From the NCBI RefSeq assembly GCF_001194135.2, contig NC_068990.1:49275677-49339676 (forward strand): a DNA stretch of 64,000 nucleotides, written 5' to 3'. This document shows positions 5,794 through 61,041 of this stretch, in pieces (the first letter of the stretch is position 1; every line of letters starts with the position of its first letter). The position numbers and the translations under genes are program-made. Origin of the DNA: Octopus bimaculoides. Lineage: Eukaryota. Below the pieces are notes generated by a model that was not told the DNA's origin, ran no database searches, and worked only from the letters and a program-made list of their open reading frames with translations.

Positions 5794-8700
5794 NCTTTGT
5801 TCCTGACTAAGAAGAGATTTATCTTTCATTCCAGTTACCCATTGACATTTGAAATGGATAACCAAAAATTTCATATCTGCGTTGTAACACTTTTTTTAAA
5901 AAGGAGAATGCAAGACTTGCAAAAACATTTGTGAAGTTTCTGGTGAGGATGCTATAGAAAATTTAAAGCTGGAGAGTTTAGTTTGGAAGATGAGTAGCAG
6001 TGGAAGACCTTCAAAATTGGATGAAGATGTTTTGAAGGCAAAAATCAAAGAAAACTCAGATATTATTACAACTAGAGAACTTGCACAGGAGTTAGGAGTT
6101 TCTCAACTTCAGGAAACCTGCGTGTCACCTACCGTTTCGGCAGACACACAAGCCAAATTGACTACATCCTCACCAGAAATAGAGAAAGAGGACTGCTTAT
6201 AAATGCCAAAACCTTCCCAAGCAAAGAATGTACCCCTCAAAACTGATTAGTAGTTAATGACTTTGGGATCAAGGCTAAATGGGTGCCCAGAAGTAGACCA
6301 GCTTGGAGGAGAGGGGTGTGGAAGCTTAAAGATCCTGCAAATGGACAGAGATTTAGAGATGTCTTACTCGAAGCCTTTGACAAAATAGAAGGGGATATAG
6401 CATCACACAATGTGAAAGACAATTGGAGGTTTCTACAGGACAACCTGCTGAGAGCCACTGACCAGATCTGTGGTTGGTGCAAAGTCCCCTCTCGACCCAA
6501 AGTAACGTGGTGGTGGAACAATGTTGTTGACAGGGCTATTAGACAAAAGAAACAGGCTTGGAAGGACTGGAAGAATGGAGGTAGCAGGGAATTGTAACAG
6601 ACTGCCAGAAGGGAAGCTAGGAGACAGGTTTACTTAGCCAGAGGGGAAGCAGATAAGAAAAAATTTGCCAATGTTCTGCACCGTAAGAACCAAAGACTTG
6701 AGGTATTTCGTGTTGCAAGACAGTGTGTGAGAGAGAAATGTGATGGTACACTTGCACGAAATGAGGCTGCTAAGAGAGAGAGGTTTGGAGACGCCACTAT
6801 GAAAGTTTGCTTAATAAAGAGAATGAATGGGAGGAAGAGAGTCTGCCGCATGTCGACCCAAAAGAGGAACCAGCTATCCTGATTGACAATACCTTGGTAG
6901 ATAAAGCAATCAAGAGTATTAAGGCAGGGAAAGCCCCCGGCCCATCAGGAATCACTGCAGAAATGCTCAAAATACCTGGCAGTGTTGGCTATAGCCTAGT
7001 CACCCGTATAGTTAATCAGGTGATACACAAGTCCTACCCAATGACTGGTGTAGCAGCAACATAGTCAACTGCTACAAAGGTAAAGGTGACGCTTTAGACA
7101 CAAACAATTACAGAGGTATCAAGTTGTTGGACCAGGTAATGAAGGTCACGGAGAGGGTCATAGCCCAACTAATTAGGGAGCGAGTCAGTTTAGATGAGAT
7201 GCAGTTTGGGTTCATTCCAGAGAAAAGTACCACTGATGCTATATTTCTGGTAAGACAGCTGCAGGAGAAATACCTAGGCAAAGAAACCTCAATACCTGGC
7301 TTTCATTGACATGGAGAAAGCCTTTGACAGGGTCCCCTGATCCCTTATCTGGTGGTCAATGAGGAAACTAGGGATAGATGAGTAGTTAGTGAGAGCTGTG
7401 CAAGCCATGTACAGGGACGCTGTCAGTAAGGGGAGGGTTGGAAATTAGTACAGGGAAGAATTCTGGGTAGAGGTAGGGGTCCACCAAGGTTCAGTCCTCA
7501 GCCCCCTCATATTTATCATAGTCCTCCAGGCAATAACACAGGAATTCAAGACATGCTGCCCCTGGGAGCTCCTCTTTGCTGATGACCTTGCTCTAATTGC
7601 TGAGTCACTATCAAAACTAGAAAAGTTTCAGGTGTGGAAGCAAGGACTAGAATCAAAGGGCCTTAGAGTCAACCTAGCTAAAACCAAAGTCTTAATAAGT
7701 AAGAAGGTAGACAAAACACAAACCCCTTCAGGTAGATGGCCCTGTTCAATCTGTAGAAAAGGCGTAGGTAGAAACTCCATAAGATGTACCCAGTGTAAGA
7801 TATGGACACATAAGAGGTGCAGCAATATCAAAGGAAGGCTAACTAGCAAGATAGTTTTTGTATGTTGCAGATGCTCAGGAGCAATAAACAATGAAAATGG
7901 GCAGAAAACAACCTTTGCCACACTCCAGAGAGAAAAACTAAAAGTAGTTGATAGCTTCCGCTACCTAGGTGACCAAGTTTGTAGCGGGGGAGGGTGCGCT
8001 GAAAGTGTAGCTGCTAGAATAAGAATAGCCTGGGCAAAGTTCAGAGAGCACTTACCTCTGCTGGTGACAAAGGGCCTCTGACTCAGAGTAAAAGGCAGAC
8101 TGTATGATGCATGTGTACGAACCGCAATGCAACATGGCAGTGAAACATGGGCCGTGACTGCCGAGGACATGCGTAAGCTTGCAAGAAATGAAGCCAGTAT
8201 GCTCCAATGGATGTGTAATGTCAGTGTGCATACTCGACAGAGTGTAAGTACCATGACAGAAAAGTTGGACCTAAGAAGCATCAGTTGTGGTGTGCAAGAG
8301 AGACAATTGCGCTGGTATGGACATGTGGAAAGAATGGATGAGGATAGCTGTGTGAAAAAGTGGCACACCCTAGCAGTGGAGGGAACCCGTGGAAGAGGTA
8401 GGCCCAGGAAGACCTGGGATGAGGTGGTGAAGCACGACCTTCGAACTGTAGGCCTCACTGAGGCAACGACTAGTGATTGGGACCTTTGGAAATATGCAGT
8501 ATGTGAGAAGACCCGGCAAGCCAAGTGAGAGCATAATCTGTGGCCTCTGCCAGAAGTGTAGCCAGCTCACTTATTCGTATCCTTACTTCATTAGACACTA
8601 AACTCTGCTTGTGAAGACCTGTTGCGGCAAGTGAATTTGAAATCGAACCAAATTCGACGACTGGCACCCATGCCAACCTCTCCTTCATTGAACACTAAAC

Positions 8701-15400: not shown

Positions 15401-18400
15401 GCAAGTGCCATTATGTGTCGCATTTGAAAAGATTGACCCATTTTCAGAAATATTCTGCAAGAAAAATTACATCTAAATTAGCCAAGACAAAAAAGAAAAG
15501 CATTAAGCAACAGTTAAAACGGTAGAAAATTGCAGTAATCAGCTGGTTCCAAGTTGATGAGATCGAGCTTTTCTGATAATGAAGATTTTTATACTTTCAT
15601 TTCAGTTAATAATCAAATCTACCTTCAGATAGATAAAAGACAACTGAATATTTGACTAGCTTATAAATAAAATAAAACATCACAAGCTTGGTTTGAGATT
15701 TTAGCATTGATCAGGCCATACAAAATATCCTATAATATTTAGTTATGTTCCTTTACATTTTAAATCAAATCCCATGGACAACTTGCTCTTTCATCTAATT
15801 AAAAGGAATTAAGTATTATTCAAAGGTATAGCTGATTCAATCAACTGTTTGACATCCAAAAGTATGCCAAAACACTAAAGACAGAAATCATAATTCAAAG
15901 ACAGAAATCGTAATTCATTAGATATTTAAATATACTTGACATGCATTCTGTTCATGATAAGGGATCAACAGTTGCTTTAAAAAACATTACCTTATAAGAA
16001 TATTTATAAGATATCTCAGTAGTTATAACAATACAACGTTGTCCATTAGCTCCAGTCACAACATACTTAGTTGATCGTTTTGGAATTGGTATGTGAGTGG
16101 TTGGCTTCTCAGTTGTAACATTAGGGGTGCTTGGCTTCTCAGTTGTAACATTAGGGGTGCTTGGCTTCTCAGTTGTAACATTAGGGGTGCTTGGCTTCTC
16201 AGTTGTAACATTAGGGGTGCTTGGCTTCTCAGTTGTAACATTAGGGGTGCTTGGCTTCTCAGTTGTAACATTAGGGGTGCTTGGCTTCTCAGTTGTAACA
16301 TTAGGGGTGCTTGACTTCTCAGTTGTAACATTAGGGGTGCTTGGCTTCTCAGTTGTAACAGAGGTGGTGCTTGGCTTCTCAGTTGTAACAGAGGTGGTGC
16401 TTGGCTTCTCAGTTGTAACAGAGGTGGTGCTTGGCTTCTCAGTTGTAACAGAGGTGGTGCTTGGCTTCTCAGTTGTAACAGAGGTGGTGCTTGGCTTCTC
16501 AGTTGTAACAGAGGTGGTGCTTGGCTTCTCAGTTGTAACAGAGGTGGTTGGCTGAGTTATAACAACTGGGTTGCTTATACTGCCGGTAGTAATGTTTGAT
16601 ACTAATATTACAAAATAAAAACAAAGAAAAATATCAAACATCATCATTATGTTTAAGTACCAATTCAGAACACAAAAATATAGCCCCCATAACCTGAAGC
16701 TGCACAAACAAAGAATATATTTGGAGAAAGTTAGGAATGCTTTAAAATTTAGATCTATTAAGAAAAAATATATAATGCTACCAATCTAATCATTCTCTTA
16801 ATCTATTTAAGAAATAAAGTTGTGTTAAGCCATGTGATATATCCATAACATTATCTTAATCATTTGGATTCTTTTTAATCCTTGTTACCACATTTATGCT
16901 GAAATATATTGCTTTGTTCCAATTAATGCTAAAATTGATAAAGAATTTATTAGAACAATTTTGCCATTATTAAGTTGGTATTTAGAAATTAAAACATGAA
17001 ATTTTGCTGGAACATTGTTTAGATAACTTTAAAACAGAGAATCTATATCATAGAACCATGGACCGTTTCAGGTAGGTTGGTATCGATAGGGTAATATATC
17101 ATGCCAACAGAGTGGGAGTTCACACAAATATAATTTCAAAGCAACTAACTGATGGTGAGAATGAATAGATGGCTTACTGAAACTTATAGATAAGCTCTCA
17201 TAACCATCTGATATAAAATAGTAGACAATCAATAAAGTTAAAATTTAAATGTACAAGTTTTGCCAGGAAAAAAAAAAAAAAGCAACTAACTGGAGAATCA
17301 ATAGCAATCAGTGATTAAATGAAGCAGGTAAGATGAATTTAAACCAAATTTGATCATTTGTTTCACATGTTTTTCCATTTTAGCATGGAATCAATAGAGA
17401 CATGAAACATTTGATGACTGCCTAACTCCACCCCTCACTTTTCAAAGACAAATGTTGAGGAAACAAAAATTTACTTAGAATTGTAATTACAAACTAATGA
17501 CAGATACTGGATATGACTTGGAAGGTAACCACTCTAAGAATAAACCAAAGATAAAGAGAAGCAGCAACTAGGAGAGAATACAGATTGCTGGGTCTAACAA
17601 AAGAAGGAATGAGAGTTTAAGATGCATGAAAAAGGCTATTTTGTTATTTGGGATGGTTAAAATAACCTAGCAGCTAATAATTTTCTACTTCATTAAGTCA
17701 TTAAAGAAAAACTGAGCTGCCAAACCAGCAAATACAAGCTTAAATTTTTACTGTTATATATCAAGATACACTGCAAGTTTAAATATTCTACAGTTATGAT
17801 CAATAACTAAGAACCAAATGGTTTTCAATCCCAAAGTCAGATAATAGCTCCACACTAGAGTAGATCTAGACAAAGTAGCTTACAATCCTAAACATCTTGG
17901 CAAAATTCATTAAATTTTTCATTATTATTAGAATTAATATATTATAAATTCCTTACTACCCACAAGGGGCTACACACAGAGGGGACAAACAAGGGCAGAC
18001 AAACGGATTAAGTCGATTATATGGACCCCAGTGCGTAACTGGTACTTATTTAATCGATCCCGAAAGGATGAAAGGCAAAGTCGACCTTGGCGGAATTTGA
18101 ACTCGGATCATAACGGCAGACAAATTACTGCTTAGCATTTCGCCTGGCGTGCTAACGTTTCTGCCAGCCTTTTTTTTTTTTTTCTTCACGTTTACAGCAC
18201 CTAGGTTTCCCAAGCAGTCACCCATCTAAGTACTAACTAGGCTCGACTTTGCTTAACTTCGGTGATCGGACGAGAACTGGTGTTTTCAAAGTGATATGGC
18301 TGTAAATTCTATTATTAGAATTAATATATTACGAGATAAAATAATTCACTTATAATTAGCATTGATTTTCTCATGTCATAGGTGCTATCTGACAAAAGGT

Positions 18401-20526
18401 AGGGTTATTTTAATGTGCAATCTTGTTCTTGCAAATTCAACATTCTAATATGTTACCTAATTTCTGAATTCTTTCTTTGTCACTGTCACAATTAACTTGA
18501 CCTAAGACAAGTGCCTTCTACTATAGCTCCAAGGCTGGCCAAAGCCCATGCAAACAGAAACTGAAAGTCTATCTTTGTACATATGTGCCACTTGACTTGA
18601 CATTGCATGATAGTTGAAAAGTGTCACCATCATACACTTGTTTCCAATATTCCATGAAAGCATGTTCAGTTATGGGGAGATATCTAGGTTGGAAGCAGGT
18701 GACAGTTGATCAAGGAAAGGCATCCAACCATAAAAAATCTACCTCAATGAATTCCATTTGACCCTTGCAAGCAAGAAAAAGTGAGCATTAAAACAATTTC
18801 AATCCTTCTGATTCATGGTGTGTTGTGCATAAAATGTATATACCATTAATCCTTTGTTAGATAGCATGGGTAGAACTAAGCCAAAGTTGATGCTTATTCA
18901 AACTAGAAAGATGAAGACAACTAAGAACACAAACCAAATCTGAATATGTTTCAAGGAAAAAAAAACTGCAAGATCCATATCTTTTACTTGCTTTGTCAAT
19001 GGACTGCTGCCAAGCTGGTGCACCATCTTAAAGAGTGTGGTTGGACAAACCAAACCCTGCACTTATTTTCTTTTTGAGCATGGTACTTAGAATAGGTTTC
19101 TTTTTGCTAAACTAAATTATGTGGATGTAAACAAACCAACACAATTTGTGAAAATGGTGGTGGGGGTAAAAATATACATATACACACAAAGGGATTCTTT
19201 CAGTTTCCATCTACCAAATCCACTCACAAGGATTTGACCAGCCCAGAGCTACAACAATTTCCACACAGTGGGACTGAACCCGGAACCATGTTGTTAGGAA
19301 GTAAGCTTCTTGCCATACAGCCCTACTTGTGCCTAGATAAAGATTCCAAAGGGATTCAAACCCTTGATTTCCAGTTTACTAGACTGGTATGTTGAGGAAG
19401 AGACATTTTAGCCAGTTAAGTACACAAAAAATTTACGTTTTCATACAAAAAAAAAATAAAAAAAGAAAATTGAATAGAAGTTTTGTGTTCTTAAATGGCT
19501 AAAACACTTGTGTGATCTAATAATTTCAGATTCTACAGTCTCATCAAGACACTTGTCAAACAAATACAACTCCAAAATTATCTTATTTGTTTTCATGTCC
19601 ATATTTCCATATTAGCATGGGTTAGATAAATATACTGAAGCAGTTTTACAGCTAATGCCCTTCCAGTCACTAACCCATGTTTTTCAAAGGGATCATTTCA
19701 CTTATCTATCATGAAGATACAAAACCAGCAGATGATCTGTTGAGAGGAAATGATATGATTGTGAGCAATTCTAAGATAAGAACAAATGTGAATACACAAG
19801 TATACAACAGATTGACACACATTTCTTAAAATGCTGAGATATAAAATTATGATATATGTAAACAAAGTTTGCTTTTTTAGAAGTATTGAGATGTATTGAA
19901 ATATATAGATATGGAAATGTTTTATTCTCAAACACATAATAATGCTGAATAGCATAAATAGCATAGAACATCCTTATATTGCAGAAGAATTTATTAGTAG
20001 CCAGCCATGAGACCCAAACTCACATCTCTGTGATTACTGGTCATAGTGCTTTACCTTTAAGCTGAACTGTCTACAAACAAATTCTTCTGCAATTTTTGAA
20101 CTTATAAATTTAGCTTTTATAGATGCTATATGTGAAAGTACGATATATGTAAAAAAATGTAATTTCACATATAGCGTCTATAAAAGCTAAATTTATAAGT
20201 GCAAAAATTGAAGAAGAATTTGTTAGTGGGCAGTTTAGCTTAAAGGTAAAGCACTGACGGGTAATCACAAGGATGTGAGTGAGTCTCATGGCTGGCCGCT
20301 AACAAATTTTTCTGCAATATAAGGATGTTCTATGCTATTCAGTATTATTATCATGCATTTGAGAATAAAATATTTCCATATCTGTGTGATAAGAAGCTTG
20401 CTTCCCAACTACATGTTTCTGGGTTCAGTCCCACTGCATGGCACCTTGGGCAAGTGTCTTGGGCCAACCAAAGCCGTGAGTGGATTTGGTAGACAAATTG
20501 AAAAGAAGCCTGTTTGTGTGTGTGTG

Positions 20527-23896: not shown

Positions 23897-23941
<45 letters not shown>

Positions 23942-25560: not shown

Positions 25561-26777
25561 ATGAATTCTGCGGTCGTTGCTGATGAAATGTTTCCCGAAG
25601 GGGTCGGCACATATATGGATATTGAAGAGGTATACTCCTTACAAAGAAGCACTTTTTATCTTTTGTTGTTCGTTACGCTACTATAACATTCGCTTATAAA
25701 GAGTATCTCCAGATGGTTTTCTAAGAGTCACCAAGTTACATGACTAAATGTGCTGGCAAAAATTTTATATTTTGTACAAATCCTTGGGTAGGAGAAATGC
25801 AGTAACGGTTTTGTAATAGGTCTGATGAAATTAAGAAACACCTGATTGACATTAGCTTTGGTTGATGGCATTAAGGCTTGTATGGGTTCAAAAATAAATG
25901 TCAACAAATAAGAGTTATGTACCCTTCGATAAAATGTGTTTGGTAGGACAATATTTTTTAAGTAGCTGGCTCCGTGCCGTCAAAAATGACGGCTAATTGT
26001 GGTATTTTATATATAAATATGAATGGTAAATCAAATTGATACACTTGCCAATGTTCACATACATTCACATCGTTCCCTTGTACACATAAACATTTTGATT
26101 TGTTTTTTTCAGTGTTGAATGTTCACCATCCCGCTTCCAGTTTGATATCACCCCTTCCTTTCTAATTCATGTTGTGACGGAGAAAAAAACATAAGAGTAT
26201 TATTATAGTAGATTATAAAACCTACATACATGTCATCATTTTTGTCAGTAATTAACAGAATTACGTCTTACTTTCTCATGGTTTCCAACCATACGGTCTT
26301 ACAACTCGTGTTTTTTTTTTTCTCTGGAAGGTGAGGGACCTTTATTGTTTTCTTTCTATGGCCGAGTGAAAAAATCAAATTGTCGAACCTTGGATTTTCG
26401 ACAACTGTGATATATTATTAATTGAAGTGTTTGTTAATGTTTGGTAACAGAACTGCTGAAACTTTATTACTAGTTATTTATTCTATTACTAAATTAGGAA
26501 GTATAATTCACTCCTATTGTTAGCCATATAAGAATTTAAACTAAATGTAGCACCTCCATTTTCACATGCAATTGTTAACTATTATTGGTTTCAAATTTTG
26601 GCACAAGACCAACAATTTCGGTGACAAGGATCAATCGATTATATCAACTCCAGTGCTCAACTGGTACTTATCTTATCGATGACCCGTCCTTGTTTTCTTT
26701 GTATCGTCTATCTGGATGTTTTGTTGTCACTTTCTTGTATCATTTGTCTGGATGTTTTGCGTTCTTGTCCCATTTCG

Positions 26778-31600: not shown

Positions 31601-33039
31601 GAACAGCCTCCATCACTGCTGACTTGATCACCTAAGTAACAGAAACTCTACTACTTCTAAGGATCCCCCTTGACATTTGAGGGAGTCTATTTTTTTTTTA
31701 TACATTCTTGATGTTTAAATGTACCTGCACATCTGCCACATGTAAAGGACTACTTTCTCTATTAGTTTTTCACCTCTTACGTGTCCATAGCTTGGACTGA
31801 GTACACTGTATGGAGTTTCTTCTGACACCTTTTCTACATATTGAGCAGGGCCATCTCCCTGAAGGGATATATGATATGTCTGTTTTGCTACTTATTAGGA
31901 CTTTGGTCTTTGCTAAATTAATTCTAAAGCCCTTTGATTGCAGTCTTTGTTTCCATACCTGAAATTTCTTCTCTGGTAGTGATTCAGCAATAAGAACAAG
32001 CTCATCAGGGTAGAGGAGCTCCCAAGGGTAGCCAGTCTTGAATTCCTCTGTTATGGATTGGAGAACTATGATTAACAAGAGGGGGCTAAGGGATTACCCT
32101 AGTGGACTCCTACTTATACACTAAATTCCTTGCTATACTCATTGGGAACTTTCATCTTACTAACAGCATCTCTGTACATGGCTTGTACAACTCTCACCAA
32201 TCATTCATCTATTCCTAGCTTCTGCATTGCCTACCAGATAAGCAAGCAGGGGACCCTATCAAAGGCTTTCTTCATGTCAACAAAAGTCAGATACAGTGGT
32301 TTATTTTTGGCTAAGTACTTTTCCTGCAGTTGCCTCACTAGGAAGATAACATCAGTGGTACTTCTACCTGCACAAATTCAAACTGCATTTCATTTATGCT
32401 AATTCTGAGACCTTTGGCAGTATGCTGTGCTTGAGAAGAAGACCCATCAAGCCAAGTGAAATCGTAGTCATGGCAGATACTGGTATCATGCAACTGGCAC
32501 CCATTACACTCTCAGAGTGGTTTGCATTAAGAAGGGCATCCAGCCTGTAAAAATCATGCCAAATTAAACTGGAGTCTAGTGCATCCCCTCAGCTTACCAG
32601 CCCTAGTCAAACTGTCCAATCCATGCCAGCATGGACAACAAACATTAAATGATGATGTAACAAAAGCAAAGTTTTGAAAGAAATATTAGCAAATAGGAAA
32701 TAACAATTGCTACACAAGGACAAAAATCGTGTTAGTTTTATTTAATGTCTATTTTCCATGCTGGTTTGACTTCTATCTTACTGGGTCCCTCTCTCTTACA
32801 AAACCCATCCACTAAGTTATGGGGATGTAAACAAAGCAACACCAATTGTGAAGCAGTGTGGTAGGTACTAACCTCAAAGACAGATACACATTCACATGTA
32901 ACAGGCTTTTGCTTTCTGTCTCCAAAATTTTAATCTGAATATTTTTCTTTTGATCTTGTCACATTCTCTTTTAACACTCATTTTTTTTCTTTGCATTTCA
33001 GATTTTGAAGATCTCTTTGATGATGATGATTTAATCTGA
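25561..33039 (+). CDS. COPS9: COP9 signalosome subunit 9 (CSNAP/MYEOV2), 3 exons, 59 aa
   Basis: Exons 25561-25629, 29285-29357, 33002-33039; GT-AG, phases 0/1. Protein [59 protein letters not shown] is colinear with human COPS9 as recalled ([50 protein letters not shown]). AATAAA at ~33123. Confidence 0.95.
25962..26532 (-). mobile_element. Possible non-autonomous Helitron-like element
   Basis: On the minus strand a 5' TCTTATAT start, and near the 3' end a hairpin gccgtc-attttt-gacggc followed ~10 nt later by CTAC (canonical CTRR). Termini only; no coding evidence. Confidence 0.3.
26680..27720 (-). mobile_element. Penelope-like element fragment (RT N-terminal part plus terminal repeat)
   Basis: ORF 26954-27463 [41 protein letters not shown]...[25 protein letters not shown] resembles PLE RT. 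A ~90-bp repeat tccttgttttctttgtatcgtctatctggatg... at ~26688 recurs at ~28474. Confidence 0.65.
27745..28115 (-). mobile_element. Short retroposon copy consisting of the RTE 3' tail
   Basis: Reverse complement of the 8900-9126 tail (catgctagcatgggttggacgattt...ctacagctggatgcccttcctaatgccaaccactc). Confidence 0.8.
28120..28630 (+). mobile_element. Second Penelope-like fragment with terminal repeat
   Basis: LLGDETYYE...[28 protein letters not shown] resembles the PLE FYGLPKxHK motif; followed by the repeat shared with 26688-26775. Confidence 0.6.
30357..30690 (-). mobile_element. Short retroposon copy consisting of the RTE 3' tail
   Basis: (ATC)n then gtttaacgtccgctttccatgctagcatgggttggacg..., near-identical to 27745-28115. 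Confidence 0.8.
30830..32400 (-). mobile_element. Older 5'-truncated RTE LINE in COPS9 intron 2
   Basis: Minus-strand [45 protein letters not shown]...[19 protein letters not shown] is the same family as 6109-9126. A plus-strand RTE tail abuts at ~32405-32660. Confidence 0.85.
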
Positions 33040-33901: not shown

Positions 33902-33944
<43 letters not shown>

Positions 33945-34662: not shown

Positions 34663-37600
34663 TGTTGTAAAGTAGGTTCCTCCCACTGGTGTGATGTGTG
34701 ACTGCCATTGTACTGTAGTTGCTGTTTTACGCTAGTAGCCACAATAGCTACTAGTCATCGGATACCATTGTATCTCTTTATATCTGAATAGTAATACACT
34801 GACTAGAACTGTTGACTCTCTTGACGACTGGCTACTGGTCTATTTATAATGGCTGCTTCCTACCACACATCACACCAGTGGGAGGAACCCACTTTACAAC
34901 ATATTTAAATTTTAAAAAAAACATTATTCCTAAAAACAAGGTAAGGTAGGGTGATCACATTGGGAAAGCTTTTGATTACAGATCTGCTTAAACAGTTGAC
35001 CTGGGAGGGGTATACAGTTTCACTACACATCTCCCCTTTTAATTATTTAATTTAACAATCAATTTCTTTTATTCACCCCACCACCTCCTACTTTTTTTCT
35101 TTCTTATATATATATTCAATATCTTTTCTTCTTAGGGTCTACTTTTAGGAATTCAGTGTTTTTTCCTTGTATGTGTGATTTTGGCTTGTACCAGGGTTGG
35201 AACCTGAAAAGTGTCATATAGCCAATCCATCGGTATTTCTACTCTTGTTGGTTCCTTTTCTATGACTCTTTCCTTAAGCTGATTTCTATGTCTCCTTTCC
35301 ATTCCATTTCTGCTTCTTACATCATACATCATTCTTCCTACATATGTTACAATTTCTCCTTCCCAGTATTACTTGCCATTTTTGTACATTCTTACATATA
35401 CCTTATCACCAATTCTAAAGAATTTTGGCATGTCTTTACTAGCACGTATTTTTTCTCTTCACTGGTAACAATTTATCAAATACTGATTTCACCTTTCTGG
35501 CAAACATTAATTCTGTTGGAGGGCTTCCTTCTGATACATTTGGGTTCAAAGTTACCCTGTATAGCCTTAAGAATTGTTGGATCGCAACCTTGTCCATAGC
35601 TTCCTTATTAGCTTTCTTTAAAGCTTTGTTAAAGGGGTCCACAAACCATTCAGTCTTTCCATTCGATCTAGGGTGATACGGTGCTATAATTTTATGTTCT
35701 AACATAAACATCTCACAGGATATAAACTGTGTTCTGTTATCAGAGACAATTATATCCAGTACACAAAATCTTGTGAACAGCTCATGTAAGAAGTTCATTA
35801 CTGTAAATAAGGTTGGTCGTTTACAAATCGCGACCTCAGGCTGTTTTCTGTAGCTGTCTCACTACTATTAAGTAGTAATATCCATTTACTGGCCTGTAAT
35901 TGGGACCATGGTATTTTCACTTCCAGCCAAGGTTCACATTTTGTAGAAAACTGGTTGATAAAAGTAAATAAAGAAAGGTTCAATGCAAAGAACTGCTAAG
36001 ATAGTTTTACTGCCAATGCACATCCTCTGCAGCCATTTTCCAGGTTATCAACTTCTTTGTCCATGCTTGGCCAGTATACGAAACTTCACATCAGCGTTTT
36101 CATTCTAGAGATACCTGAGTGTCTCACATGGAACTCTTTTAGCATTCTCTTCTGTAACATCTGTGGTATGACCACCCTCTTAGTGTACATTAGTACACCA
36201 TCACATCTTAGTACTTGCTCACATCTTGGCAGTTCTTTGCATCAGACCTTTCTTTATTTACTTTTATCCACCACAGTTTTCTGTTTGTCTCATTAATAAA
36301 TTTGTCATTTCTTTTTATTTCTTCTAAAATTACTGGTAGTTTACGCACAATGTTCCACATTACTTTTATGTTTCTGCTTTTAGCGCTGCTATTATGTTGT
36401 CCTCCAGCAGTTCGTTATTTCTCAGAATTAACCTAGACACACCATCTGCATGCCCCAACTTCTTTGAAGACAGATATTCCATTCTATAATCATAGTTTAA
36501 TAGAATGGTACCCCACCGCTGCAGTCTGTTTGCCATATATGTCAGGATTCCTTTCTTGGATCCATATATCATTATTAGATACCAAAAATGTCTGCCATGA
36601 ATGAGCCTATGGAACTTTTTCATGCCAAATATAATAACCAACACCTCTTTTTCAATCTGGCTCTTGCTCTTTGCTGCTGGCAATAATGTCCCTGATGTGT
36701 AAGCTATAGCTTTTCTCCTGCCATCATAATCCTTGTGTAGGAGCACAGCTTCTATCCCATACTCACTAGCATCTGTAGAGTATTATCTCTAACTTTGGGT
36801 CAAAATGCATAAGATACAAGTCTGAAGTTAATACATCTTTTAACTCAAATGCTTTCTGACATTTCTCTGTCCAAACCCATTTGGGATATACACTTGGTAA
36901 TAAATTTACCAAGCCTAGGAATGCTTGTAGCCTTGTCACGTTCATTGGGGACAGCATATTTTGTACTGTTATTGCTCTTGATGGTTCCAGTCTGTGTTCA
37001 CTTTCATCAATTACTTGACCTAGGCATTTTATTTTTTCCATCAAAAATTTGCATTTTCCTTCTGCCAGTTTTAGCTCATATTCACTTATTCTCTTGAATA
37101 TTTTCTTTATCAAAATGTCATCAAGGTATACGATGGCGAAGTCACAATCACTTAACATCGCATCCATTATTTGTTAGAATATGGCAGGTGCCACTTTTAC
37201 TCCAAACAGCAATCATTTGAATTTGTACAATCCACAGTGTGTTGATTGTTAATAGATGTGTGTAATCTTCCTCTAGCTGAATTTGAAGGTACATCTTTTT
37301 CTTTATGTAGATCGCTGGTGCTGCCCAGTCTGCATAATCTTTACAATTATATTCAGGCTTTCCAATCTTTCTAGTTCTTTATTGACCTAGTCTACTGCCA
37401 CAAATGGCCCATTCCATTTGGGCTTGAAAATAGGTGTTGAATTTTCTTTGATAATAATCCTTGCTTTTGTTTTTGTGCATCAGCCTAACCCTTTCAAAAA
37501 ATCTTTTGGGAAAGTTTCTCTCATTTTTTTGTCTCAGTTCATCAACCTCGTTCAATCATTTGACTGCTCCATTTACATTATTGCACAAAACGCTTATGGG

Positions 37601-39817: not shown

Positions 39818-42638
39818 TGTCGTAAACTAATTTAAAAGAAGGTTTTTGCTCACCGTCTAATCCATTAATCATGGCTGTCCAATGATTAAGACTCGTTTTA
39901 TATTAGGTAAAGAAAGCATCCATCTATCAATGTCATTCTACACTATGCTGCATTTTCGTACTCAGTACAAAATATATCTATATTTTTATCTATTATTTAC
40001 TATTGTAGAAAGGAATTAATGATAGGATATTATAATTCATAACACTCTTCCCTGCTGAGTGAAAAAGTCAGTCATGGTGCATCCGAAACATATAGTCCTT
40101 TAGATAAAAAGGGGTCTTGATAATTTGTCCCAATCTGAGTTTTCACATCTCTTTTTGTCCTTGAATAGCTGATGTTTGTTACTCATATTATTCTCATCCA
40201 GGTACACTTTGCCAGTTTTGTTGCCCATAATATTCTCATTCAGGTACTCTTTGCCGGTTGCTAATCTACTCGCGTTTTCATGTGCCGGACTGTGAACTCC
40301 ATTTCTTTATGTTGGTTCTATTGGTGCACTGTTGTGGTCGGTTCTTTGTTTATTGATTATTTGTGGATCTTGTAGTTCTGTGTCAAACTCTGTCGAGTTG
40401 ACTCTAGTTGTGTTTGTGTGCTATCGTTGCTTCCTTGATTGATAGATTGTCCTACTGGAGCAAGATTGTGTATTGACACTGTATCTACTCATCCATTTCC
40501 AAATTGTACGGAGAAATCGTCTCCAACAATTTAATGTTTTCTACAAGAGGATCCTCCTTATTTCTGAGATGTCAACAATGCAGGATTGTGCTTCCAGTAT
40601 TCTGGAGGAATTCAGGTAGAATGGTTCTCACTGTTGATGAACTTGAAAATTTAAACATTCACTCATGAAGGGTTGTGTTGGTAGCTGTACAGAGGATTCT
40701 TCTCATGACTGCTTGTGCCATAGGAAGGGCTGTCAACCATTGTCCTTTATCGAGTTGTAGAGAACTAAGTGCTAGATTTATGGTCTTCATGAGGGTTCTG
40801 TTGGTCCTTTCACATTGGCCATTGCCTCAAGATCGATAGGGGGATGCAGGTGGGAAATTACTGTTTCAATACTCGTGTCTTTGCATGGGTATGCAAACAG
40901 GAACCTTGAGTACTCATCAACTATTACCAATAAGTCGCAGTATTGTGTGGTTGATGTCAGGGGACCAACAAAATTGATTGAGAGGCATTCCCATAGTCTC
41001 GGTGCCTGTATTAACTGACCCATAAAGGGCTTGTGGAAGTTGGGTTTGTTTGTCGCATGTAGAGCAAGCAAGTGTCATTTCACAGATTTCATAGAGGGAG
41101 AACGGCAGGTCACTTTTGTATGGCACAGTTGTGATGAGTTACCGGTGTTGTAGTGTCTCTTGTTGCTGCACATCTTGATAGCACATTTGCTTTGTTTTGA
41201 GTTCCTGATCTGTAGTAGATTGTGTAATTTATATCTGAGAGGTCCAAGTGCCAGTATATAAGTTTTTGATTTTTGACATCCCTTGCTTATTGAAGACCAT
41301 TGCTAATCAGTGTTGATTGGTGATGGTGTTGCAGTATGGGGAAGCATGTATTAGGTGGTCCCATTTGTGACCTCATTCTATGATTGCACAGGCTTTTCTC
41401 TTGATGATGGATTGGTGTTTTTCTGTCTTTGAAAGGGACCTTGAATAGAAGGCCTCTAAGCCTTCCTTGTGATGGCATCCCTCCCAAGGCTAGGTTGGAA
41501 GCATCTGTTCTGATGGTAAGTGGTATTCTGAGTAGTGGAACGGCCAGTATGACCTTTACCAATGCAACTTGAGAGATGCAATTGTTTTTACTTCTTCTGG
41601 CAGTCCTACTTTGTTGATATTTTCTCTGGTTCTTGAAAGTGGAATGGTGAGTTGGGAACACTGAGGTATTCACTTTGCATAAAATGCAAAAATGCCTATC
41701 ATTCAATTTAGTTTTCTGTGATATGCAGCTGACATGTTGTTGAAAAACCTTGTTTGCTGCTATTTCATTTAGAAGATCATTGATCTGATGGGTAGTGTAG
41801 GCATCCAGTTGTATTTAGATATTTATAGTGTTTGAGTAGTTGATCACCAGTCTTTTCTTCCTTCCATTAGATGTCACAAGGCATTGAGCTTGCCAAGGAC
41901 TATGGTTTTCCTGAATATCCTCTGAAAGTAACCTGTCTATTTCGTGCTTAATAAACTCTGTGTCTCTAGGTCTGCATCTTGAAGTTGTAGTAATTGGTTT
42001 CAGCTTAGAGATCTTAATGCCTGGAAATAGTTCATACGCGATGCATTTGAGGCTTGACATAGACATGCAGAATGACACAGGCTTGTGTGTGACTACCGAG
42101 TGTTGACAGAGGATATCGACTCCGATGGTGATTGGAGTTACAAAGTAGTCAACCACAAGGAAATTAATGTTGTGTTATTTCCTAGTTGTAGTTTGCTACT
42201 GAATTTGCCTTTAGTCTCCAGTGCTGTGTTGTTGACTAGGCTAACTTTTTCTGGAGTGGTATGATTGTATGGTAATCCCCAGGCTGCAAGAAGATTCGTT
42301 TCTATAAATGTCCTGTGCATTGTTGCCCTTAGTCTAGTAGAGTCCTCTCAAACACCTTGGCATCCATTTAGATAAAGTTTGAATAAAATTTGTTGTAAAC
42401 CAATTCAAAAGAAAGCTTTAATTCAAACTTTGTTCTGCTCGCTGCCTAATCTGTTAATGATGGCTGTCAAAGATTAAGAAACATTATTTTATATTAGGTA
42501 AAAACAGCATCCTTTTATCAAAGTCATTCTACATTACACCACATTTTTGTACTCAATACAAAATATGATATCTATATTATCATCTATTATTTACTGTTGT
42601 AGAAAGGAATTAATGACAGGATATTGTAATTCATAATA
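39818..42638 (-). mobile_element. Second, internally deleted Gypsy LTR retrotransposon
   Basis: Diverged direct repeats 39818-40044 and 42391-42638; PPT agggaagag at 40045-40053. RT FIKHEIDRLLSEDIQENHSPWQAQCLV..KKRLVINYSNTIN, RNase H IRTDASNLALGG, integrase WECLSINFVGPL..LLVIVDEYSRFLFAYPC. Confidence 0.8.
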
Positions 42639-51100: not shown

Positions 51101-54100
51101 CAAAAAAAAAAAAAAAATTGATATAAATACTTGTTCTTTGATTGTGACATAGAACAATGGCATACACAAAAAAAAGGAGATAAAACAAATATTACAAAGA
51201 AAAGGATACCAAGGTCAACATAAATTGGATTAGCCATACCAAACATTGTTGCTACAGCCTTAACATCTAAGGAATTAACATCAAATATGTCCTTCATGCT
51301 ACTTGAAGCATAGGCTCTAATGTAGGATTTATATCCTTCTCGTGCTGCCTTATTCAAATGGTAGTTCTTTTGTATTAATTTCTCTAACTGAAAATGAAAT
51401 TTTTAAAAATACATGGAGGATGAAAAACCACTGTCAACATCCATTTCAATATCAACATAATATCATAAAGTTCACATTAATGATTCTTTTTAAGTCTCGC
51501 ACTTAGATCAACCTAATTCATTAAAGACTAAATTTTAAGAGACTACAACTACTCTGGGAATTTATATAACACCAGTTCACCAAACTTATTTACAATACAT
51601 ATTATCTTAAGGCAGTAAACTAGCAATCATTTGAGGCTTTGGATAGAATACCTCACATTCTTTATTTCAACTATCTACATACTGAGTTCAAATCGTGATG
51701 AAGTCAAGTTTGCCTTTCATCCTTTCAGGGCCAATAAAAAAGCACCAATCCAGGCAGTAGATTGGTTGAAGTGTTAGTAGATCAAGCAAGATGCCCTGTA
51801 TCTGTTCTGGCTCTTTGTGTCTTGACAGCAGTGCCTGCAATAATATTGGTGCCCAAGTTGGCAGCCTTTCTCTTGGTTAAAATCAGTGGCAAGGAACAGG
51901 GAGACTTGCATGCATAGCAACTGCCAGTCTTCGTTATAAAATTAAAAAAAAATTTGCCCAGGCTTATGCAAATAAGCAGCAGGTACATGGTCAACCTTGA
52001 TGTATAAAGGTCTTAAACCTATTCTCATAATAAATGTAGGTAAGTTTAATTTCTCAGATTTCCAGTGATTTTCAGTTTAGTTATCCTTAAAAATGTATGT
52101 TCAACACTCAACAGAAATTATAAAATACAGTTTTACTAAGAGTATTATATACAGTTTTTTATATATACTCAGTATACTAAATATGTAGTGACACAAATTG
52201 CCATGAAATTTTAATTCTCAATAATTTCACTTACACAAAACTACTCTGACAACACATAAAAACTATCTTTAAGTACAAAATGAATATATTACAAACCTGT
52301 GGTTGAATGTCAGAAATACTGCTCCAAGTAAATTCATACTCATTCAAAGTTACTCTGGCAGCTTTAAGGTATCTTAGAAATCCTAACTCATTAGGCTGTA
52401 AAATTAGCAAGGCTTTTCCAGTAGAGCCTTCTCCACGGGCAGTCCGGCCTACACGATGGATGTATTCCTGTGAAGAGATTTAAAAGAATTTTAATTTCAG
52501 AAAATAGAACATGCCTCTAATTACAATCTGAAATAAGTAACATGTTTTGTAAACAATACTGATTCTTTTTAAAACATTCATATTCATGGAAATTTGAGAC
52601 AAATCAATTGCTGGATTACATCAATAAAATCTGGTACTTCAGCTCACATTCCCCTAAAAAGAATTGAACTTAGCACTGTGATGCAATAAAATACAATTAT
52701 ACAGTATTTAACACTAGCATTTAAACTGGCCATATCGGCCCAAATATGATATCTGTTTTATGTTTTAGCCAACCAGATCCAGTCCATCACACCTACTCTT
52801 CAATATCATCATGAAATATACAATCAGACCATAATTTTAAATCTATAAAATAATGTATGATTAATTAAAAACGAAAAAGCATTACATTTGAGAGAATAAT
52901 TTGAAAGCTAAAGGAAAAATAGATGAGTGGCTCAAGGCTATAATGCTTTTAATCATAGATAAATTTATAACATCCTGGTTCACCTTATTACAGATAAGGG
53001 TTTAGGGCAAAAACATATAGTAGATAATAACTGAGAATTCAGTTTTAAAACAATTTCCTCTCTACACCAACAAATGTAACATTTTCTATACCTACAAAGT
53101 CATACAATCACTAACACCTCAGTAGATAAAGGAAAGATTACATTCCATTGAAAAAGTTTAATAATAATTTCCAGTGAACAAAATATACGAACCACCAACT
53201 AATATGTTTACTTTTAGCTACATAGCTGAATTTTTAAAACTTTTTTTTTTTATTGTGCTAAGCATTAGCAGTATTTACCCTCATTTATAATTTTTATGGT
53301 TTCTGGGAATTCTATAATTCTCAAACAATTCTTTTATCTCTAAACCAGTATATTGCACATACACACATCATCAACATCATCATAATTTTTTACATCCACA
53401 ATTTCCAAGTTGCAATGGTCAGATGAGATTTATCGAAAGCAACATTCTGTCACATGAAACAGCCAAACTACAGGACATATTGTTTATAGTAGACATACAC
53501 AAACACACACACAGTTTTTATCTACTTCAGCCCACAAGCAGACATCTGCCCAAGATGCTATACAGTTGAATTGAACCAGAAACTACGTAGATGCCAAGTA
53601 AACTGACAGCCATGCCTGTGCCTATTCAATTCTGTATTAATTAATTAGATTTTCAATTACTAACACATTAAGACGTATATGTCTGCTGATGATCTCTAAA
53701 ACTTAAATGCTGGAGTTATCTCCCATAATTGTCACTATTCAACAGAAATTTATTTCTTCCTTTCTATTTCTAAAGCGGTGAGCTGGCAAAAACGTTAGCA
53801 CGCCAGGCGAAATGCTTAGCGGTATTTCTGCCGCTACATTCTGAGTTCAAATTCTGCCAAGGTCGACTTTGCCTTTCATCCTTTCGGGGTCGATTAAATA
53901 AGTACCAGTTACGCACTGGAATCGATTATAATCGACTTAATCCTTTTGTTTGTCCCCTCTGTGTGTAACCTCTTGTCAGCAGTAAAGAAATAAGAAACTT
54001 ATTTCTTCCTTTCATTAGGTTTTAAAATGATTCCAGCCATTTATAGCTTAGTCAGAAGGGAAGGGCAATACCTATTACCCTTTTCAGGGATCTCTGAGAT

Positions 54101-60100: not shown

Positions 60101-61041
60101 ATAAAAAGCATTATATTTACTTGCTCTAGTCCTTCAACTGTAGCCTGAATACTAGTGTCATGAACACCTACATAGATAGGTTCTTTCTTGAGAGAAATCC
60201 GAGCCAAATCTTCTGTTTTGTTTGTCTGAGTGGCTGAAAACAGCATTGTCTGTCTCTTTTCTTGTGAAGAGGAAAATATAGAAAACACAAGTAAATTTCT
60301 GTAGGTTTAAAACAATAAAATTATTTGTATATATACTTATGTAGAACACAATATAAAACAGGATACCTGAAACATGTATAATGTAGATGAAAGGATTACA
60401 GACAATGTAAAAACATCCTGCTCTTCTCTTAAGTAAACAAAAACAATAATTGAGAATCATCTGACAGAGAACTATTCCTCTAAATCACTATGTATAGCAG
60501 AAGCTTATTAGGATATAACATTAATAGTCCTCCAGATTTAGTCGGCCATGTAGTTAGCTAAACAGTATGTGTTTATATGGAACATAGTATAAATTAGGAT
60601 ACTTTAAACATGTGTAACATAAATAATTATGTTATCTTTGCGAAAGTCTTAGCTGTGGCGATTGCAGATGATGTGAAAACATCCTATTGTTCTCTTGGGT
60701 GAACAGAAATACAACTGAAAAATCTTCTTTTAGGATAATTGTCCCTTCAACGTAGAGGCTGCAGTTTTATTCTTCAGCTACTCAGGGAATCAAATCGCTA
60801 TACAAACAGATAACAAACGATAATTTATATCAACTTCATATAACAAAGGTAAGAAGCTAGACAGCAAGCAAGATGGAAATAATGGCTTAATCTACTAAAG
60901 TACAAGAAAATGAGAAATGTAATTACTTGGCAACACTCTAATGATTTTCTTCATTTCTTCTGCAAAACCAATGTCTAGTATACGGTCAGCTTCATCAATA
61001 ATTAAACATTGGAGATTCTTATACATAAAATTAGATGTGCT
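48177..61041 (-). CDS. DDX18: ATP-dependent DEAD-box RNA helicase DDX18/HAS1, 3' seven coding exons (5' part outside window)
   Basis: Exons (minus): 61041-60927 ([19 protein letters not shown]), 60260-60121 ([24 protein letters not shown]), 58743-58582 ([33 protein letters not shown]), 55732-55580 ([39 protein letters not shown]), 52467-52297 ([12 protein letters not shown]), 51387-51210 ([26 protein letters not shown]), 48289-48177 (basic tail, TAG). All GT-AG with phases consistent. AATAAA at ~48124-48129. Confidence 0.97.
49050..50240 (-). mobile_element. Decayed full-length mariner in the last DDX18 intron
   Basis: TA+ttgggtcatccaataaataat terminus; [48 protein letters not shown] and [15 protein letters not shown], with many disruptions. 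Confidence 0.85.
53765..53998 (+). mobile_element. Full-length tRNA-derived SINE with a 15-bp TSD
   Basis: Head aaagcggtgagctggcaaaaacgttagcacgcc, B-box-like gagttcaaattc, (aagaaat) tail; ttatttcttcctttc duplicated at 53750-53764 and 53999-54013. Confidence 0.85.
54950..55442 (+). mobile_element. Highly decayed mariner transposase remnant
   Basis: [49 protein letters not shown] and [14 protein letters not shown]-like segments. Confidence 0.5.
56550..57962 (+). mobile_element. Non-autonomous piggyBac element (contains a gap)
   Basis: TTAA-CCCTTTTGTTACC ... GGTAACGAAAGGG-TTAA (TSDs 56546-56549 and 57963-57966). Start of a transposase-like acidic N-terminus [18 protein letters not shown]; the left ~350 bp resemble 63209-63540. 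Confidence 0.88.

What the first reader, a model, noticed from the sequence alone, without database searches (positions are those of the whole stretch)
17923..18331. 5S rRNA-(A)14-SINE chimeric retrocopy inside one perfect 22-bp TSD: possible proto-SINE3
Seen: on the minus strand a full-length 5S rRNA copy (18309-18190) is followed by gtgaag, 14 A's and a nearly complete tRNA-SINE (18169-17945). The whole 365-bp unit sits between identical 22-mers tattattagaattaatatatta (17923-17944 and 18310-18331). No SINE head remnant lies upstream of the 5S, so this looks like one insertion rather than 5S landing in a SINE. The sister SINE at 53765 has a 15-bp TSD, so long TSDs suit this machinery. No TTTT terminator occurs until ~17905. 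Established: template-switch chimeras (U6-L1 type) occur in mammals, and 5S-headed SINE3 families exist. Inference: the RT copied SINE RNA, then jumped onto an oligoadenylated 5S RNA. A 5S internal promoter could read through to give a ~400-nt RNA with a retrotransposable tail. Caveat: box C reads TTAGATGGG rather than TTGGATGGG and may be weakened.
Basis: partly seen in the sequence, partly recalled or inferred. Interest (0 to 1): 0.8.

Follow-up and report, generated by a model that had tools for sequence, protein, structure and literature searches.

The report
5S rRNA–SINE chimeric retrocopy in octopus
An intron of an Octopus bimaculoides gene holds a complete 5S ribosomal RNA copy, a run of 14 A's and a SINE, inserted together as one piece; this kind of reverse-transcriptase template-switch product is already known, and here it is seen as a single, fresh-looking locus.

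Summary
On the minus strand, a full-length and structurally intact 5S rRNA copy (Rfam 105 bits) is followed by TGAAG, 14 A's and a nearly complete SINE. The whole unit sits between exact 22-bp direct repeats, which are far longer than chance gives. Neither half has a target-site duplication of its own, and no SINE head lies upstream of the 5S. One LINE-type insertion of a composite cDNA is therefore by far the best reading.

The window is O. bimaculoides chromosome CM046610.1. The unit lies in sense orientation in an intron of the LAMP-like gene LOC106883513.

The most likely origin is a reverse-transcriptase jump from SINE RNA onto an oligoadenylated, 3'-extended 5S RNA. This is the mechanism already proposed for chimeric retrogenes and for 5S-headed SINEs such as SINE3/AmnSINE1 and HaSE3.

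I could not tell whether the jump happened at this locus or in a progenitor that has since multiplied. No searchable collection here holds cephalopod DNA. The giant squid genome is reported to have about 24,000 5S-derived loci, so a family is a real possibility.

The "proto-SINE3" idea is untested. The "weakened box C" caveat is unconvincing. The SINE's tRNA origin was not confirmed. This is a new member of a known kind, of moderate-low interest.

The parts
18310..18331 (-). 5' target-site duplication. The sense-strand sequence is TAATATATTAATTCTAATAATA.
   Evidence: Exact 22/22 match to 17923-17944, and the flanks differ immediately. The maximum in 200 shuffles was 15 bp.
18308..18309 (-). 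Two extra bases (GA) between the duplication and position 1 of the 5S model.
   Evidence: Sequence. The Rfam alignment starts at 18307.
18189..18307 (-). Full-length, structurally intact 5S rRNA copy. Box A-like motif at 18259-18245, IE-like at 18242-18237, box C-like at 18230-18213.
   Evidence: RF00001, 105 bits, model positions 1-120 of 120. 32 of 34 model pairs are standard pairs. Seven pairs changed on both sides relative to human 5S and still pair. Motif coordinates.
18184..18188 (-). TGAAG: a 5-nt extension beyond the 5S model end. No T-run terminator follows the 5S.
   Evidence: Sequence.
18170..18183 (-). Pure A14 linker between the 5S copy and the SINE.
   Evidence: T14 on the + strand at 18170-18183.
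17945..18169 (-). SINE copy lacking at least 7 nt of the head seen in the sister copy. Box-B-like motif GAGTTCAAATTCC at 18104-18092. Conserved core GGTCGACTTTGCCTTTCATCC at 18086-18066. Tail ...GTAGTAAGGAATTTA, not poly(A).
   Evidence: 84% identity to 53782-53989. Coordinates. The core is also found in metagenome contig L001.
17923..17944 (-). 3' target-site duplication.
17902..17905 (-). First TTTT on the sense strand downstream of the 5S start. This is the earliest possible Pol III stop for a transcript started in the 5S copy, about 405 nt from its start.
53744..54013 (+). Sister SINE of the same family, flanked by a 21-bp duplication with one mismatch (53744-53764 and 53993-54013). Ten filler bases lie before its head. 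It serves as the comparator for head, tail and duplication length.

Best explanation
The unit is a bipartite chimeric retrocopy made in a single LINE-driven, target-primed reverse transcription event.

Proposed steps:
1. The LINE enzyme nicked the AT-rich target with a 22-bp stagger.
2. It primed on the 3' tail of a SINE RNA. The tail is of the non-poly(A), stringent type.
3. It copied the SINE almost to its 5' end.
4. It then jumped onto the 3' end of a 5S RNA that carried a short 3' extension and an oligo(A) tail, the kind of species made by nuclear surveillance.
5. It copied that RNA to its 5' end, and the cDNA was joined to the other side of the target.

Shown:
- The anatomy: full-length 5S, TGAAG-A14, SINE, all in one orientation.
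- The single 22-bp duplication around the whole unit.
- The absence of separate duplications for either half.
- The structural integrity of the 5S copy.
- Youth of the insertion: 58 unchanged sites in the two 22-mers plus A14 imply under about 5% divergence since insertion.

Inferred:
- The template jump itself.
- The oligoadenylated acceptor RNA.
- That the jump happened at this locus rather than in a progenitor element.

I put about 0.85 on 'one LINE-mediated insertion of a composite'. I put about 0.45 on the stricter claim that the chimera was born at this very locus.
For: - Full-length 5S, model 1-120, 105 bits.
- 32 of 34 pairs intact, with 7 double-sided compensations relative to human 5S. 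The source was therefore an intact 5S RNA, not an old pseudogene.
- Exact 22-bp duplication brackets the whole unit, against a maximum of 15 bp in 200 shuffles.
- No duplication around 5S-A14 alone (longest shared string 4 nt) or around the SINE alone (6 nt).
- No SINE head upstream of the 5S.
- The SINE is slightly 5'-truncated relative to its sister.
- The sister SINE has a 15-21 bp duplication, so long duplications are normal for this machinery.
- 22 bp is far longer than the duplications of DNA transposons or LTR elements (established knowledge).
- Published criteria for chimeric retrogenes are matched on four of five points, and a WEIRD-MgSINE precedent exists for a SINE as the 3' part (PMC2104539).
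- Age bound of 5.2% from 58 unchanged sites.
Against: - The two parts are not directly joined, unlike classical U6-L1 chimeras. The TGAAG+A14 linker needs an oligoadenylated, 3'-extended 5S RNA, which has not been shown in octopus.
- A and T runs of 10 nt or more are common in this genome (28 in 64 kb). A14 could therefore be templated from a genomic source locus.
- No U-run from Pol III termination is present at the end of the 5S copy.
- In human, 5S/L1 chimeras are mostly truncated and antisense (bioRxiv 10.1101/2025.02.02.635956), unlike this full-length sense copy.
- Meeting such a unit in one 64-kb window hints that these units are common. That fits an amplifying family at least as well as a one-off event.
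- About 24,000 5S-derived loci are reported in giant squid.
- There are no genome-wide or cross-species data.
- The window and the only retrievable record are the same assembly contigs, so the junction has no independent support.
Confidence: 0.45

Rival explanations
1. The unit is a daughter copy of an already composite, multi-copy element. In this reading, a 5S-headed dimeric SINE (5S monomer, A-rich linker, SINE monomer) arose earlier by the same kind of template switch. It is transcribed from the 5S internal promoter or as part of longer transcripts, and is retrotransposed through the SINE tail. This locus would be one of many copies.
For: - Giant squid is reported to have about 24,000 5S-derived loci, 'many likely SINEs' (PMC6962438).
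- 5S-plus-tRNA-SINE chimeric families exist, for example HaSE3 and SINE3/AmnSINE1.
- An A-rich linker between monomers is the usual architecture of dimeric SINEs (established knowledge).
- The copy starts at the 5S 5' end, as a Pol III transcript from the 5S promoter would.
- There is no TTTT inside the unit, so read-through into the SINE tail is possible.
- Finding one copy in a single 64-kb window is easier to explain if thousands exist.
Against: - Only one 5S hit and one such junction occur in the 64 kb, against two or more plain SINE copies.
- The 5S part is intact along its whole length, including helix I outside the promoter. In established 5S-headed SINEs mainly the promoter region stays conserved (PMC10886601).
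- Retroposed 5S promoters are thought to be weak without upstream signals (Kapitonov & Jurka, as cited in PMC3272025).
- The junction pattern search found nothing. That null is uninformative, because the collections lack cephalopod DNA.
Confidence: 0.35
2. Two independent insertions. Either a SINE landed first with the 22-bp duplication and a polyadenylated 5S retropseudogene later landed exactly at its 5' boundary, or the order was reversed.
For: - 5S-derived copies and SINEs may both be very numerous, so a few exact adjacencies per genome are expected by chance (own estimate, inference).
- The A14 looks like the tail of an independent retropseudogene.
Against: - A second target-primed insertion should carry its own duplication, and none exists. 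The longest shared strings are 4 nt for 5S-A14 and 6 nt for the SINE.
- The second insertion would have to fall exactly at the boundary. It would have to leave no SINE head upstream and leave the old 22-bp duplication intact.
- The SINE's own machinery gives 15-22 bp duplications.
Confidence: 0.08
3. Assembly artefact, or a DNA-level capture without reverse transcription. For example, a fragment of a 5S rDNA repeat could have been joined to a SINE during assembly or during double-strand-break repair.
For: - The assembly is short-read based, with many N gaps.
- The chromosome-level record reuses the same contigs, so the junction has no independent confirmation.
- TGAAG-A14 could be genomic spacer sequence following a 5S gene.
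Against: - The unit lies inside a 21-kb gap-free stretch, 5795-27021.
- A misjoin would not create matching 22-bp repeats exactly at the outer ends of the two parts.
- The 5S copy begins within 2 nt of the RNA 5' end and carries no upstream spacer, as expected for an RNA-derived copy.
- A14 is shorter than typical assembly k-mers.
Confidence: 0.05

Closest known systems
LINE-mediated bipartite chimeric retrogenes (Buzdin, Gogvadze and co-workers: U6-L1, 5S-L1, WEIRD-MGL and WEIRD-MgSINE)
   Same: - The 5' part is a full-length copy of a small cellular RNA.
- The 3' part is a 5'-truncated retroelement. A SINE in this role has the WEIRD-MgSINE precedent.
- Both parts have the same orientation.
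- The whole unit is flanked by one 10-25 bp direct repeat (PMC2104539).
   Different: - The parts are separated by a TGAAG+A14 linker instead of being fused directly.
- The host is a cephalopod.
- The 3' partner has a non-poly(A) tail of the stringent type.
- Human 5S/L1 chimeras are mostly truncated and antisense. This one is full-length and in sense.
5S-headed SINEs thought to come from a SINE-to-5S template switch: SINE3/AmnSINE1/OS-SINE1 (DeuSINEs), HaSE3 of Helicoverpa, MEG-TR of fruit bats
   Same: - A 5S-derived 5' module with box A/IE/C is placed upstream of the body and tail of a co-resident SINE.
- The proposed genesis is the same.
   Different: - Those are multi-copy families in which the tRNA-related part has been partly lost and the 5S part trimmed to the promoter region.
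- Here a complete 5S, an A14 linker and a nearly complete SINE are seen at one locus.
- Copy number and transcription are unknown here.
Dimeric SINEs with an A-rich linker (Alu and others)
   Same: A left monomer derived from a Pol III RNA, an A-run linker, and a right monomer that carries the tail used for retrotransposition (established knowledge).
   Different: There is no evidence that this dimer has propagated. The left monomer is 5S rather than 7SL or tRNA.
Genuine 5S rRNA gene (RF00001)
   Same: Full-length sequence and secondary structure, with internal control region motifs.
   Different: - Solitary and intronic.
- No T-run terminator; it is followed by TGAAG-A14.
- Flanked, together with a SINE, by a target-site duplication. 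It is therefore a retrocopy and not a gene of the rDNA array.

Membership tests
5S rRNA (Rfam RF00001) sequence | Covariance-model score above the gathering threshold over the full model | tested here: met
   105 bits against 38, model positions 1-120 of 120.
5S rRNA (Rfam RF00001) sequence | Helices I-V maintained | tested here: met
   32 of 34 model pairs are standard pairs.
Functional 5S rRNA gene | T-run Pol III terminator directly after the 3' end, and a tandem rDNA array context | tested here: not met
   TGAAG-A14 follows the 3' end, and the first TTTT is at 17905-17902. This is the only 5S hit in 64 kb. It lies in an intron of LOC106883513.
LINE-mediated chimeric retrogene (criteria listed in PMC2104539) | (i) The 5' part is a full-length copy of a cellular RNA | tested here: met
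   Only 2 extra nt lie 5' of model position 1.
LINE-mediated chimeric retrogene (criteria listed in PMC2104539) | (ii) The 3' part is a 5'-truncated retroelement copy | tested here: inconclusive
   The copy lacks at least 7 nt (GCGGTGA) that the sister copy has. No family consensus was available to fix the true 5' end.
LINE-mediated chimeric retrogene (criteria listed in PMC2104539) | (iv) The parts are in the same transcriptional orientation | tested here: met
   Both parts are on the minus strand.
LINE-mediated chimeric retrogene (criteria listed in PMC2104539) | (iv) The parts are directly joined | tested here: not met
   A 19-nt TGAAG+A14 linker lies between the 5S model end and the SINE.
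LINE-mediated chimeric retrogene (criteria listed in PMC2104539) | (v) The whole chimera is flanked by one short direct repeat, and the parts have none of their own | tested here: met
   22/22 exact repeat. The longest repeats around the parts alone are 4 and 6 nt.
SINE3 / 5S-headed SINE family | 5S-derived head with box A, IE and box C | tested here: met
   Motifs at 18259-18245, 18242-18237 and 18230-18213. Their function was not tested.
SINE3 / 5S-headed SINE family | Many dispersed copies sharing the same head-body junction | not testable with these tools
   One copy in the window. The junction pattern gave 0 hits in metagenome and genome contigs. The SINE-core control shows that those collections hold no cephalopod DNA.
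SINE3 / 5S-headed SINE family | Pol III transcription from the 5S promoter | not testable with these tools
   Needs small-RNA or Pol III ChIP data from octopus.
SINE3 / 5S-headed SINE family | 3' tail shared with a partner LINE | tested here: inconclusive
   The tail is shared with the sister SINE. No LINE 3' end in the window matches it.
tRNA-derived SINE (SINE2), for the 3' part | Head recognisable as tRNA-related | tested here: not met
   ARAGORN finds 0 genes. The Rfam tRNA model gives no hit at E <= 10 on either copy. Only a box-B-like GAGTTCAAATTCC is visible by eye.
tRNA-derived SINE (SINE2), for the 3' part | Short, repeated, flanked by target-site duplications, with a non-coding body and a conserved core | tested here: met
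   Two full copies plus fragments occur in the window. The duplications are 22 bp and 21 bp. The core is shared with an unrelated metagenome SINE.

The most novel reading that the evidence does not exclude
The unit is the founder, or an early member, of a 5S-headed dimeric SINE family that is active in octopus. A complete 5S, landed by chance behind an AT-rich, TATA-like target sequence, would drive Pol III read-through across the A14 linker into a SINE whose tail is recognised by the partner LINE. That would be the still-intact 'dimer' intermediate of the pathway proposed for SINE3/AmnSINE1/HaSE3. It would also help explain the very large numbers of 5S-derived loci reported in cephalopod genomes.
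Probability: 0.25. Interest if true: 0.55.

Novelty: new member of a known kind. Interest (0 to 1): 0.35.

Why it matters
The origin of 5S-headed SINEs by a reverse-transcriptase jump from a SINE RNA onto 5S rRNA has been inferred only from family consensus sequences that are already remodelled. A young single locus shows what the immediate product of such a jump looks like: a complete 5S, the acceptor RNA's oligo(A) tail, a nearly complete SINE and one clean duplication. It also suggests that the acceptor was a surveillance-tagged, oligoadenylated 5S RNA.

The locus could be a useful marker, since presence or absence in other Octopus species would date the event. It is also a starting point for asking why cephalopod genomes hold so many 5S-derived loci. 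On its own it does not change the current understanding of retroposition.

Tried and rejected
1. I searched the 5.8-billion-protein collection with the 59-aa ORF that spans the 5S/A14/SINE junction, hoping to find other junction copies through called ORFs. There were no hits.
2. A gapped junction pattern (GATGGGTGAC N35-65 GCTGGCARAAACGTTAGCAC) found nothing in metagenome or genome contigs. The control with the SINE core found one unrelated metagenome contig and nothing in genome or viral contigs. These collections therefore hold no cephalopod DNA, and the null says nothing about copy number.
3. I tried to reach an orthologous or independent copy of the locus.
 - Exact look-up of the neighbouring 251-aa ORF found nothing on record.
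 - A DDX18 exon search returned only short non-octopus fragments.
 - The last protein search found the O. bimaculoides LAMP-like protein P0121, and its locus L002 was fetched. L002 turned out to be the same contigs as the window: 100% identity with the same gaps. It identifies the species and host gene but is not independent evidence.
4. A reference cephalopod 5S sequence could not be obtained. Walker & Doolittle 1983 (PMC326244), Buzdin 2003 (PMC169886) and Albertin 2015 (PMC4795812) are not held. Sequence-string searches of the literature gave only irrelevant hits.
5. Minimum-free-energy folding of the 5S copy is no better than that of shuffles (z = 0.62). Thermodynamic folding is uninformative for 5S, so I relied on the covariance model instead.
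6. I searched the window for a partner LINE by similarity to the SINE tail. Nothing exceeded chance.
7. I considered a second template jump to explain the 7-mer GAATTTA, which occurs both at the start of the 5S copy and at the end of the SINE. I rejected it. The 5' copy is part of a compensated helix I (UUUACAGC/GCUGUAAA), and the 3' copy aligns with the sister SINE's tail. Chance in AT-rich sequence is the simpler explanation.
8. DNA-transposon and LTR-element mechanisms are rejected. The unit has no terminal inverted repeats or LTRs, and a 22-bp duplication is far too long for them.
Full report
**What is there**

Read on the minus strand, the region runs as follows:
- a 22-mer, TAATATATTAATTCTAATAATA (18331-18310);
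- two bases, GA;
- a 5S rRNA copy (18307-18189);
- TGAAG (18188-18184);
- fourteen A's (18183-18170);
- a SINE copy (18169-17945) ending ...GTAGTAAGGAATTTA;
- the same 22-mer again (17944-17923).

Rfam's 5S model matches from position 1 to 120 of 120 with 105 bits, against a gathering score of 38 (E = 5.6e-22). It is the only 5S match in the 64 kb, even at E <= 1.

The SINE part is 84% identical over 221 bp to a second copy at 53782-53989 on the plus strand. Shorter fragments of related elements lie at 26623-26680 and 51684-51747.

**Is the 22-bp repeat more than chance?**

The two 22-mers are identical, and the neighbouring bases differ on both sides. Among all 22-mers that recur in the window, this is the only pair less than 500 bp apart that is not part of a tandem array or a dispersed repeat. 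In 200 dinucleotide-preserving shuffles of the local, AT-rich 6 kb, the longest direct repeat at 100-1000 bp spacing was 15 bp. The repeat is therefore real. Its position exactly at the outer ends of the 5S and of the SINE marks it as a target-site duplication.

**One insertion or two?**

A separate insertion of 5S-A14 or of the SINE should have left its own duplication. The longest string shared between the 41 nt upstream of the 5S and the 40 nt downstream of A14 is 4 nt. For the SINE alone it is 6 nt. No remnant of the SINE head lies upstream of the 5S: alignment score 7, against a control mean of 7.9.

The sister SINE carries a duplication of 15 exact bases, which extends to 21 bp with one mismatch. 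Long duplications are thus normal for the enzyme that moves this SINE. A 22-bp duplication is far beyond what DNA transposons or LTR elements make (established knowledge). The unit has no terminal inverted repeats. One LINE-type, target-primed insertion of a composite cDNA is by far the best reading; I put about 0.85 on it.

**State of the 5S copy**

- 32 of the 34 base pairs of the Rfam model are standard pairs.
- 20 of the 21 transitions run from G/C to A/T.
- Seven pairs differ on both sides and still pair, three differ on one side and still pair, and two are broken.

Random decay would break many more pairs. The source was therefore a structurally intact, AT-shifted 5S RNA. It may be the species' own 5S or a functional variant.

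That concern is doubtful. The partner strand reads CTTGG where vertebrates have CCTGG, which looks like a compensated pair of changes in helix IV (sequence, inference). As far as I recall, Drosophila 5S carries the same variant (memory, not tested).

**Age**

The two 22-mers and the A14 give 58 sites without a substitution. This bounds divergence since insertion at about 5% (95% level). The insertion is young relative to the 16% difference between the two SINE copies.

**The linker**

The 5S copy does not end in the U-run of a normal Pol III transcript. It ends in TGAAG followed by A14. [quoted passage not shown] An oligoadenylated, 3'-extended 5S RNA is therefore a plausible acceptor, and reverse transcriptases of LINEs are known to jump to the 3' ends of other RNAs (established knowledge; model summarised in PMC2104539).

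This step is inferred. There is also a caution: runs of 10 or more A or T are common in this genome (28 in 64 kb). The A14 could instead be templated from a genomic source locus.

**The SINE**

- Its head is not recognised as a tRNA by ARAGORN or by the Rfam tRNA model at E <= 10. Only a box-B-like GAGTTCAAATTCC is visible by eye. The 'tRNA-SINE' label is unconfirmed.
- Relative to the sister copy, the head lacks at least GCGGTGA. Without a family consensus the true 5' end cannot be fixed.
- The tail is not poly(A). No LINE 3' end in the window matches it.
- Its core, GGTCGACTTTGCCTTTCATCC, recurs in a metagenome contig (L001) inside a different SINE whose head mixes tRNA-like and 5S-like segments.

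**Where it is**

The last protein search, made with the neighbouring 251-aa mucin-repeat ORF, found 'uncharacterized protein LOC106883513 [Octopus bimaculoides]', a LAMP-family protein (P0121). Its genomic locus L002 comes from GCA_001194135.2, chromosome CM046610.1. It is 100% identical to the window over 21,227 bp and has the same gaps.

The window is therefore this assembly, with window x equal to record position 49,275,676 + x. The unit is at 49,293,599-49,294,007. It lies in the intron upstream of the repeat-rich exon (window 16641-15991) and in the same orientation as the gene. Because the record reuses the same contigs, it gives no independent support for the junction.

**How it most likely arose**

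The anatomy matches four of the five published criteria for LINE-mediated chimeric retrogenes (PMC2104539):
- met: a full-length small-RNA copy in the 5' position;
- met or inconclusive: a 5'-truncated retroelement in the 3' position;
- met: same orientation;
- met: one flanking duplication;
- not met: 'directly joined', because of the 19-nt linker.

A SINE as the 3' partner has a precedent in WEIRD-MgSINE. The same jump, from SINE RNA to 5S rRNA, is the accepted proposal for the origin of SINE3/AmnSINE1-type heads (PMC4824008; PMC4758252) and of HaSE3 in Helicoverpa (PMC3272025).

The unit differs from human 5S/L1 chimeras, which are mostly truncated and antisense (bioRxiv 10.1101/2025.02.02.635956).

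**What stays open**

I could not decide whether the jump happened at this locus or whether the locus is a daughter of an already composite, multiplying element.
- The junction-ORF search found nothing.
- The junction pattern found nothing in metagenome or genome contigs.
- The SINE-core control shows that these collections contain essentially no cephalopod DNA, so these nulls carry no weight.

The giant squid genome paper reports about 24,000 5S-derived loci, 'many likely SINEs' (PMC6962438). This raises the prior for a family. Meeting such a unit in a single 64-kb window points the same way.

Against a mature family stands the fact that the 5S is intact over its whole length, whereas established 5S-headed SINEs conserve mainly the promoter region (PMC10886601). 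In addition, retroposed 5S promoters are thought to be weak without upstream signals (cited in PMC3272025).

My estimates are:

| Explanation | Probability |
|---|---|
| Birth event at this locus | about 0.45 |
| Daughter copy of a composite family | about 0.35 |
| Two-step insertion | about 0.08 |
| Artefact or DNA-level capture | about 0.05 |

**Verdict**

The 'proto-SINE3' extension is untested. The finding is a new member of a known kind, a chimeric retrocopy in a cephalopod that is tidy and young. Its interest is moderate-low unless a genome-wide search shows that it founded, or belongs to, an active 5S-headed SINE family.

Noticed in passing
L001 6400-6613 (+), metagenome contig Ga0066187_1002493: A SINE-like element of an unknown marine host. 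Its head combines three segments: a tRNA box-A-like stretch (GGCATAGTGGT), a 5S-like stretch covering the box A/IE/box C region (GAAGTTACTCTACATCGAGCCCAGTTAGTACTGGGATGGGTGAC), and a tRNA box-B-like stretch (GGTTCGACTCCCGG). These are followed by the same core, GGTCGACTTTGCCTTTCATCC, as the octopus SINE. Rfam gives no hit at gathering score.
   Followed up: partly
window 15952-16707 (-), tandem repeat 16101-16518: Exon of the LAMP-like gene LOC106883513 with about 17 near-perfect 30-bp (10-aa) Thr/Ser/Pro repeats (TTEKPSTTSV / TTEKPSTPNV). It is a mucin-like domain that looks like a young VNTR.
   Followed up: partly
window 50983-60288 (-): Exons of a DDX18/HAS1-type DEAD-box helicase lie at about 60246-60120, 58743-58582, 55735-55580, 52470-52300 and about 51300. 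The gene continues beyond the window end.
   Followed up: partly
window 18303-18309 and 17945-17951 (-): The 7-mer GAATTTA is both the first 7 nt after the 5' duplication (start of the 5S copy) and the last 7 nt before the 3' duplication (SINE tail). This is probably chance in AT-rich sequence. No mechanism was found for it.
   Followed up: partly
window 23903-23940 and 33903-33942 (+): Two long pure A runs (38 and 40 nt) start exactly 10,000 bp apart. This could be coincidence or an assembly or scaffolding oddity. I did not examine it.
   Followed up: no
window 19000-19420 (-): A near-threshold tRNA-like hit (19346-19411, 27.1 bits against a gathering score of 29) lies directly upstream of what looks like another, different tRNA-related SINE (...GGTTCCGGGTTCAGTCCCACTG...), 1 kb from the unit.
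   Followed up: no
window 6200-8530 (+), 31770-32080 (-), 35400-37200 (-), 40800-42200 (-), 43400-45200 (-): Fragmented reverse-transcriptase and integrase ORFs of LINE and LTR retroelements. None has a 3' end matching the SINE tail, so the partner LINE is not identified in this window.
   Followed up: partly
window 53765-53774 (+): The sister SINE carries 10 filler bases (TATTTCTAAA) between its 5' duplication and its head. They resemble part of its own target site, which suggests untidy, microhomology-type 5' joining by this machinery.
   Followed up: no
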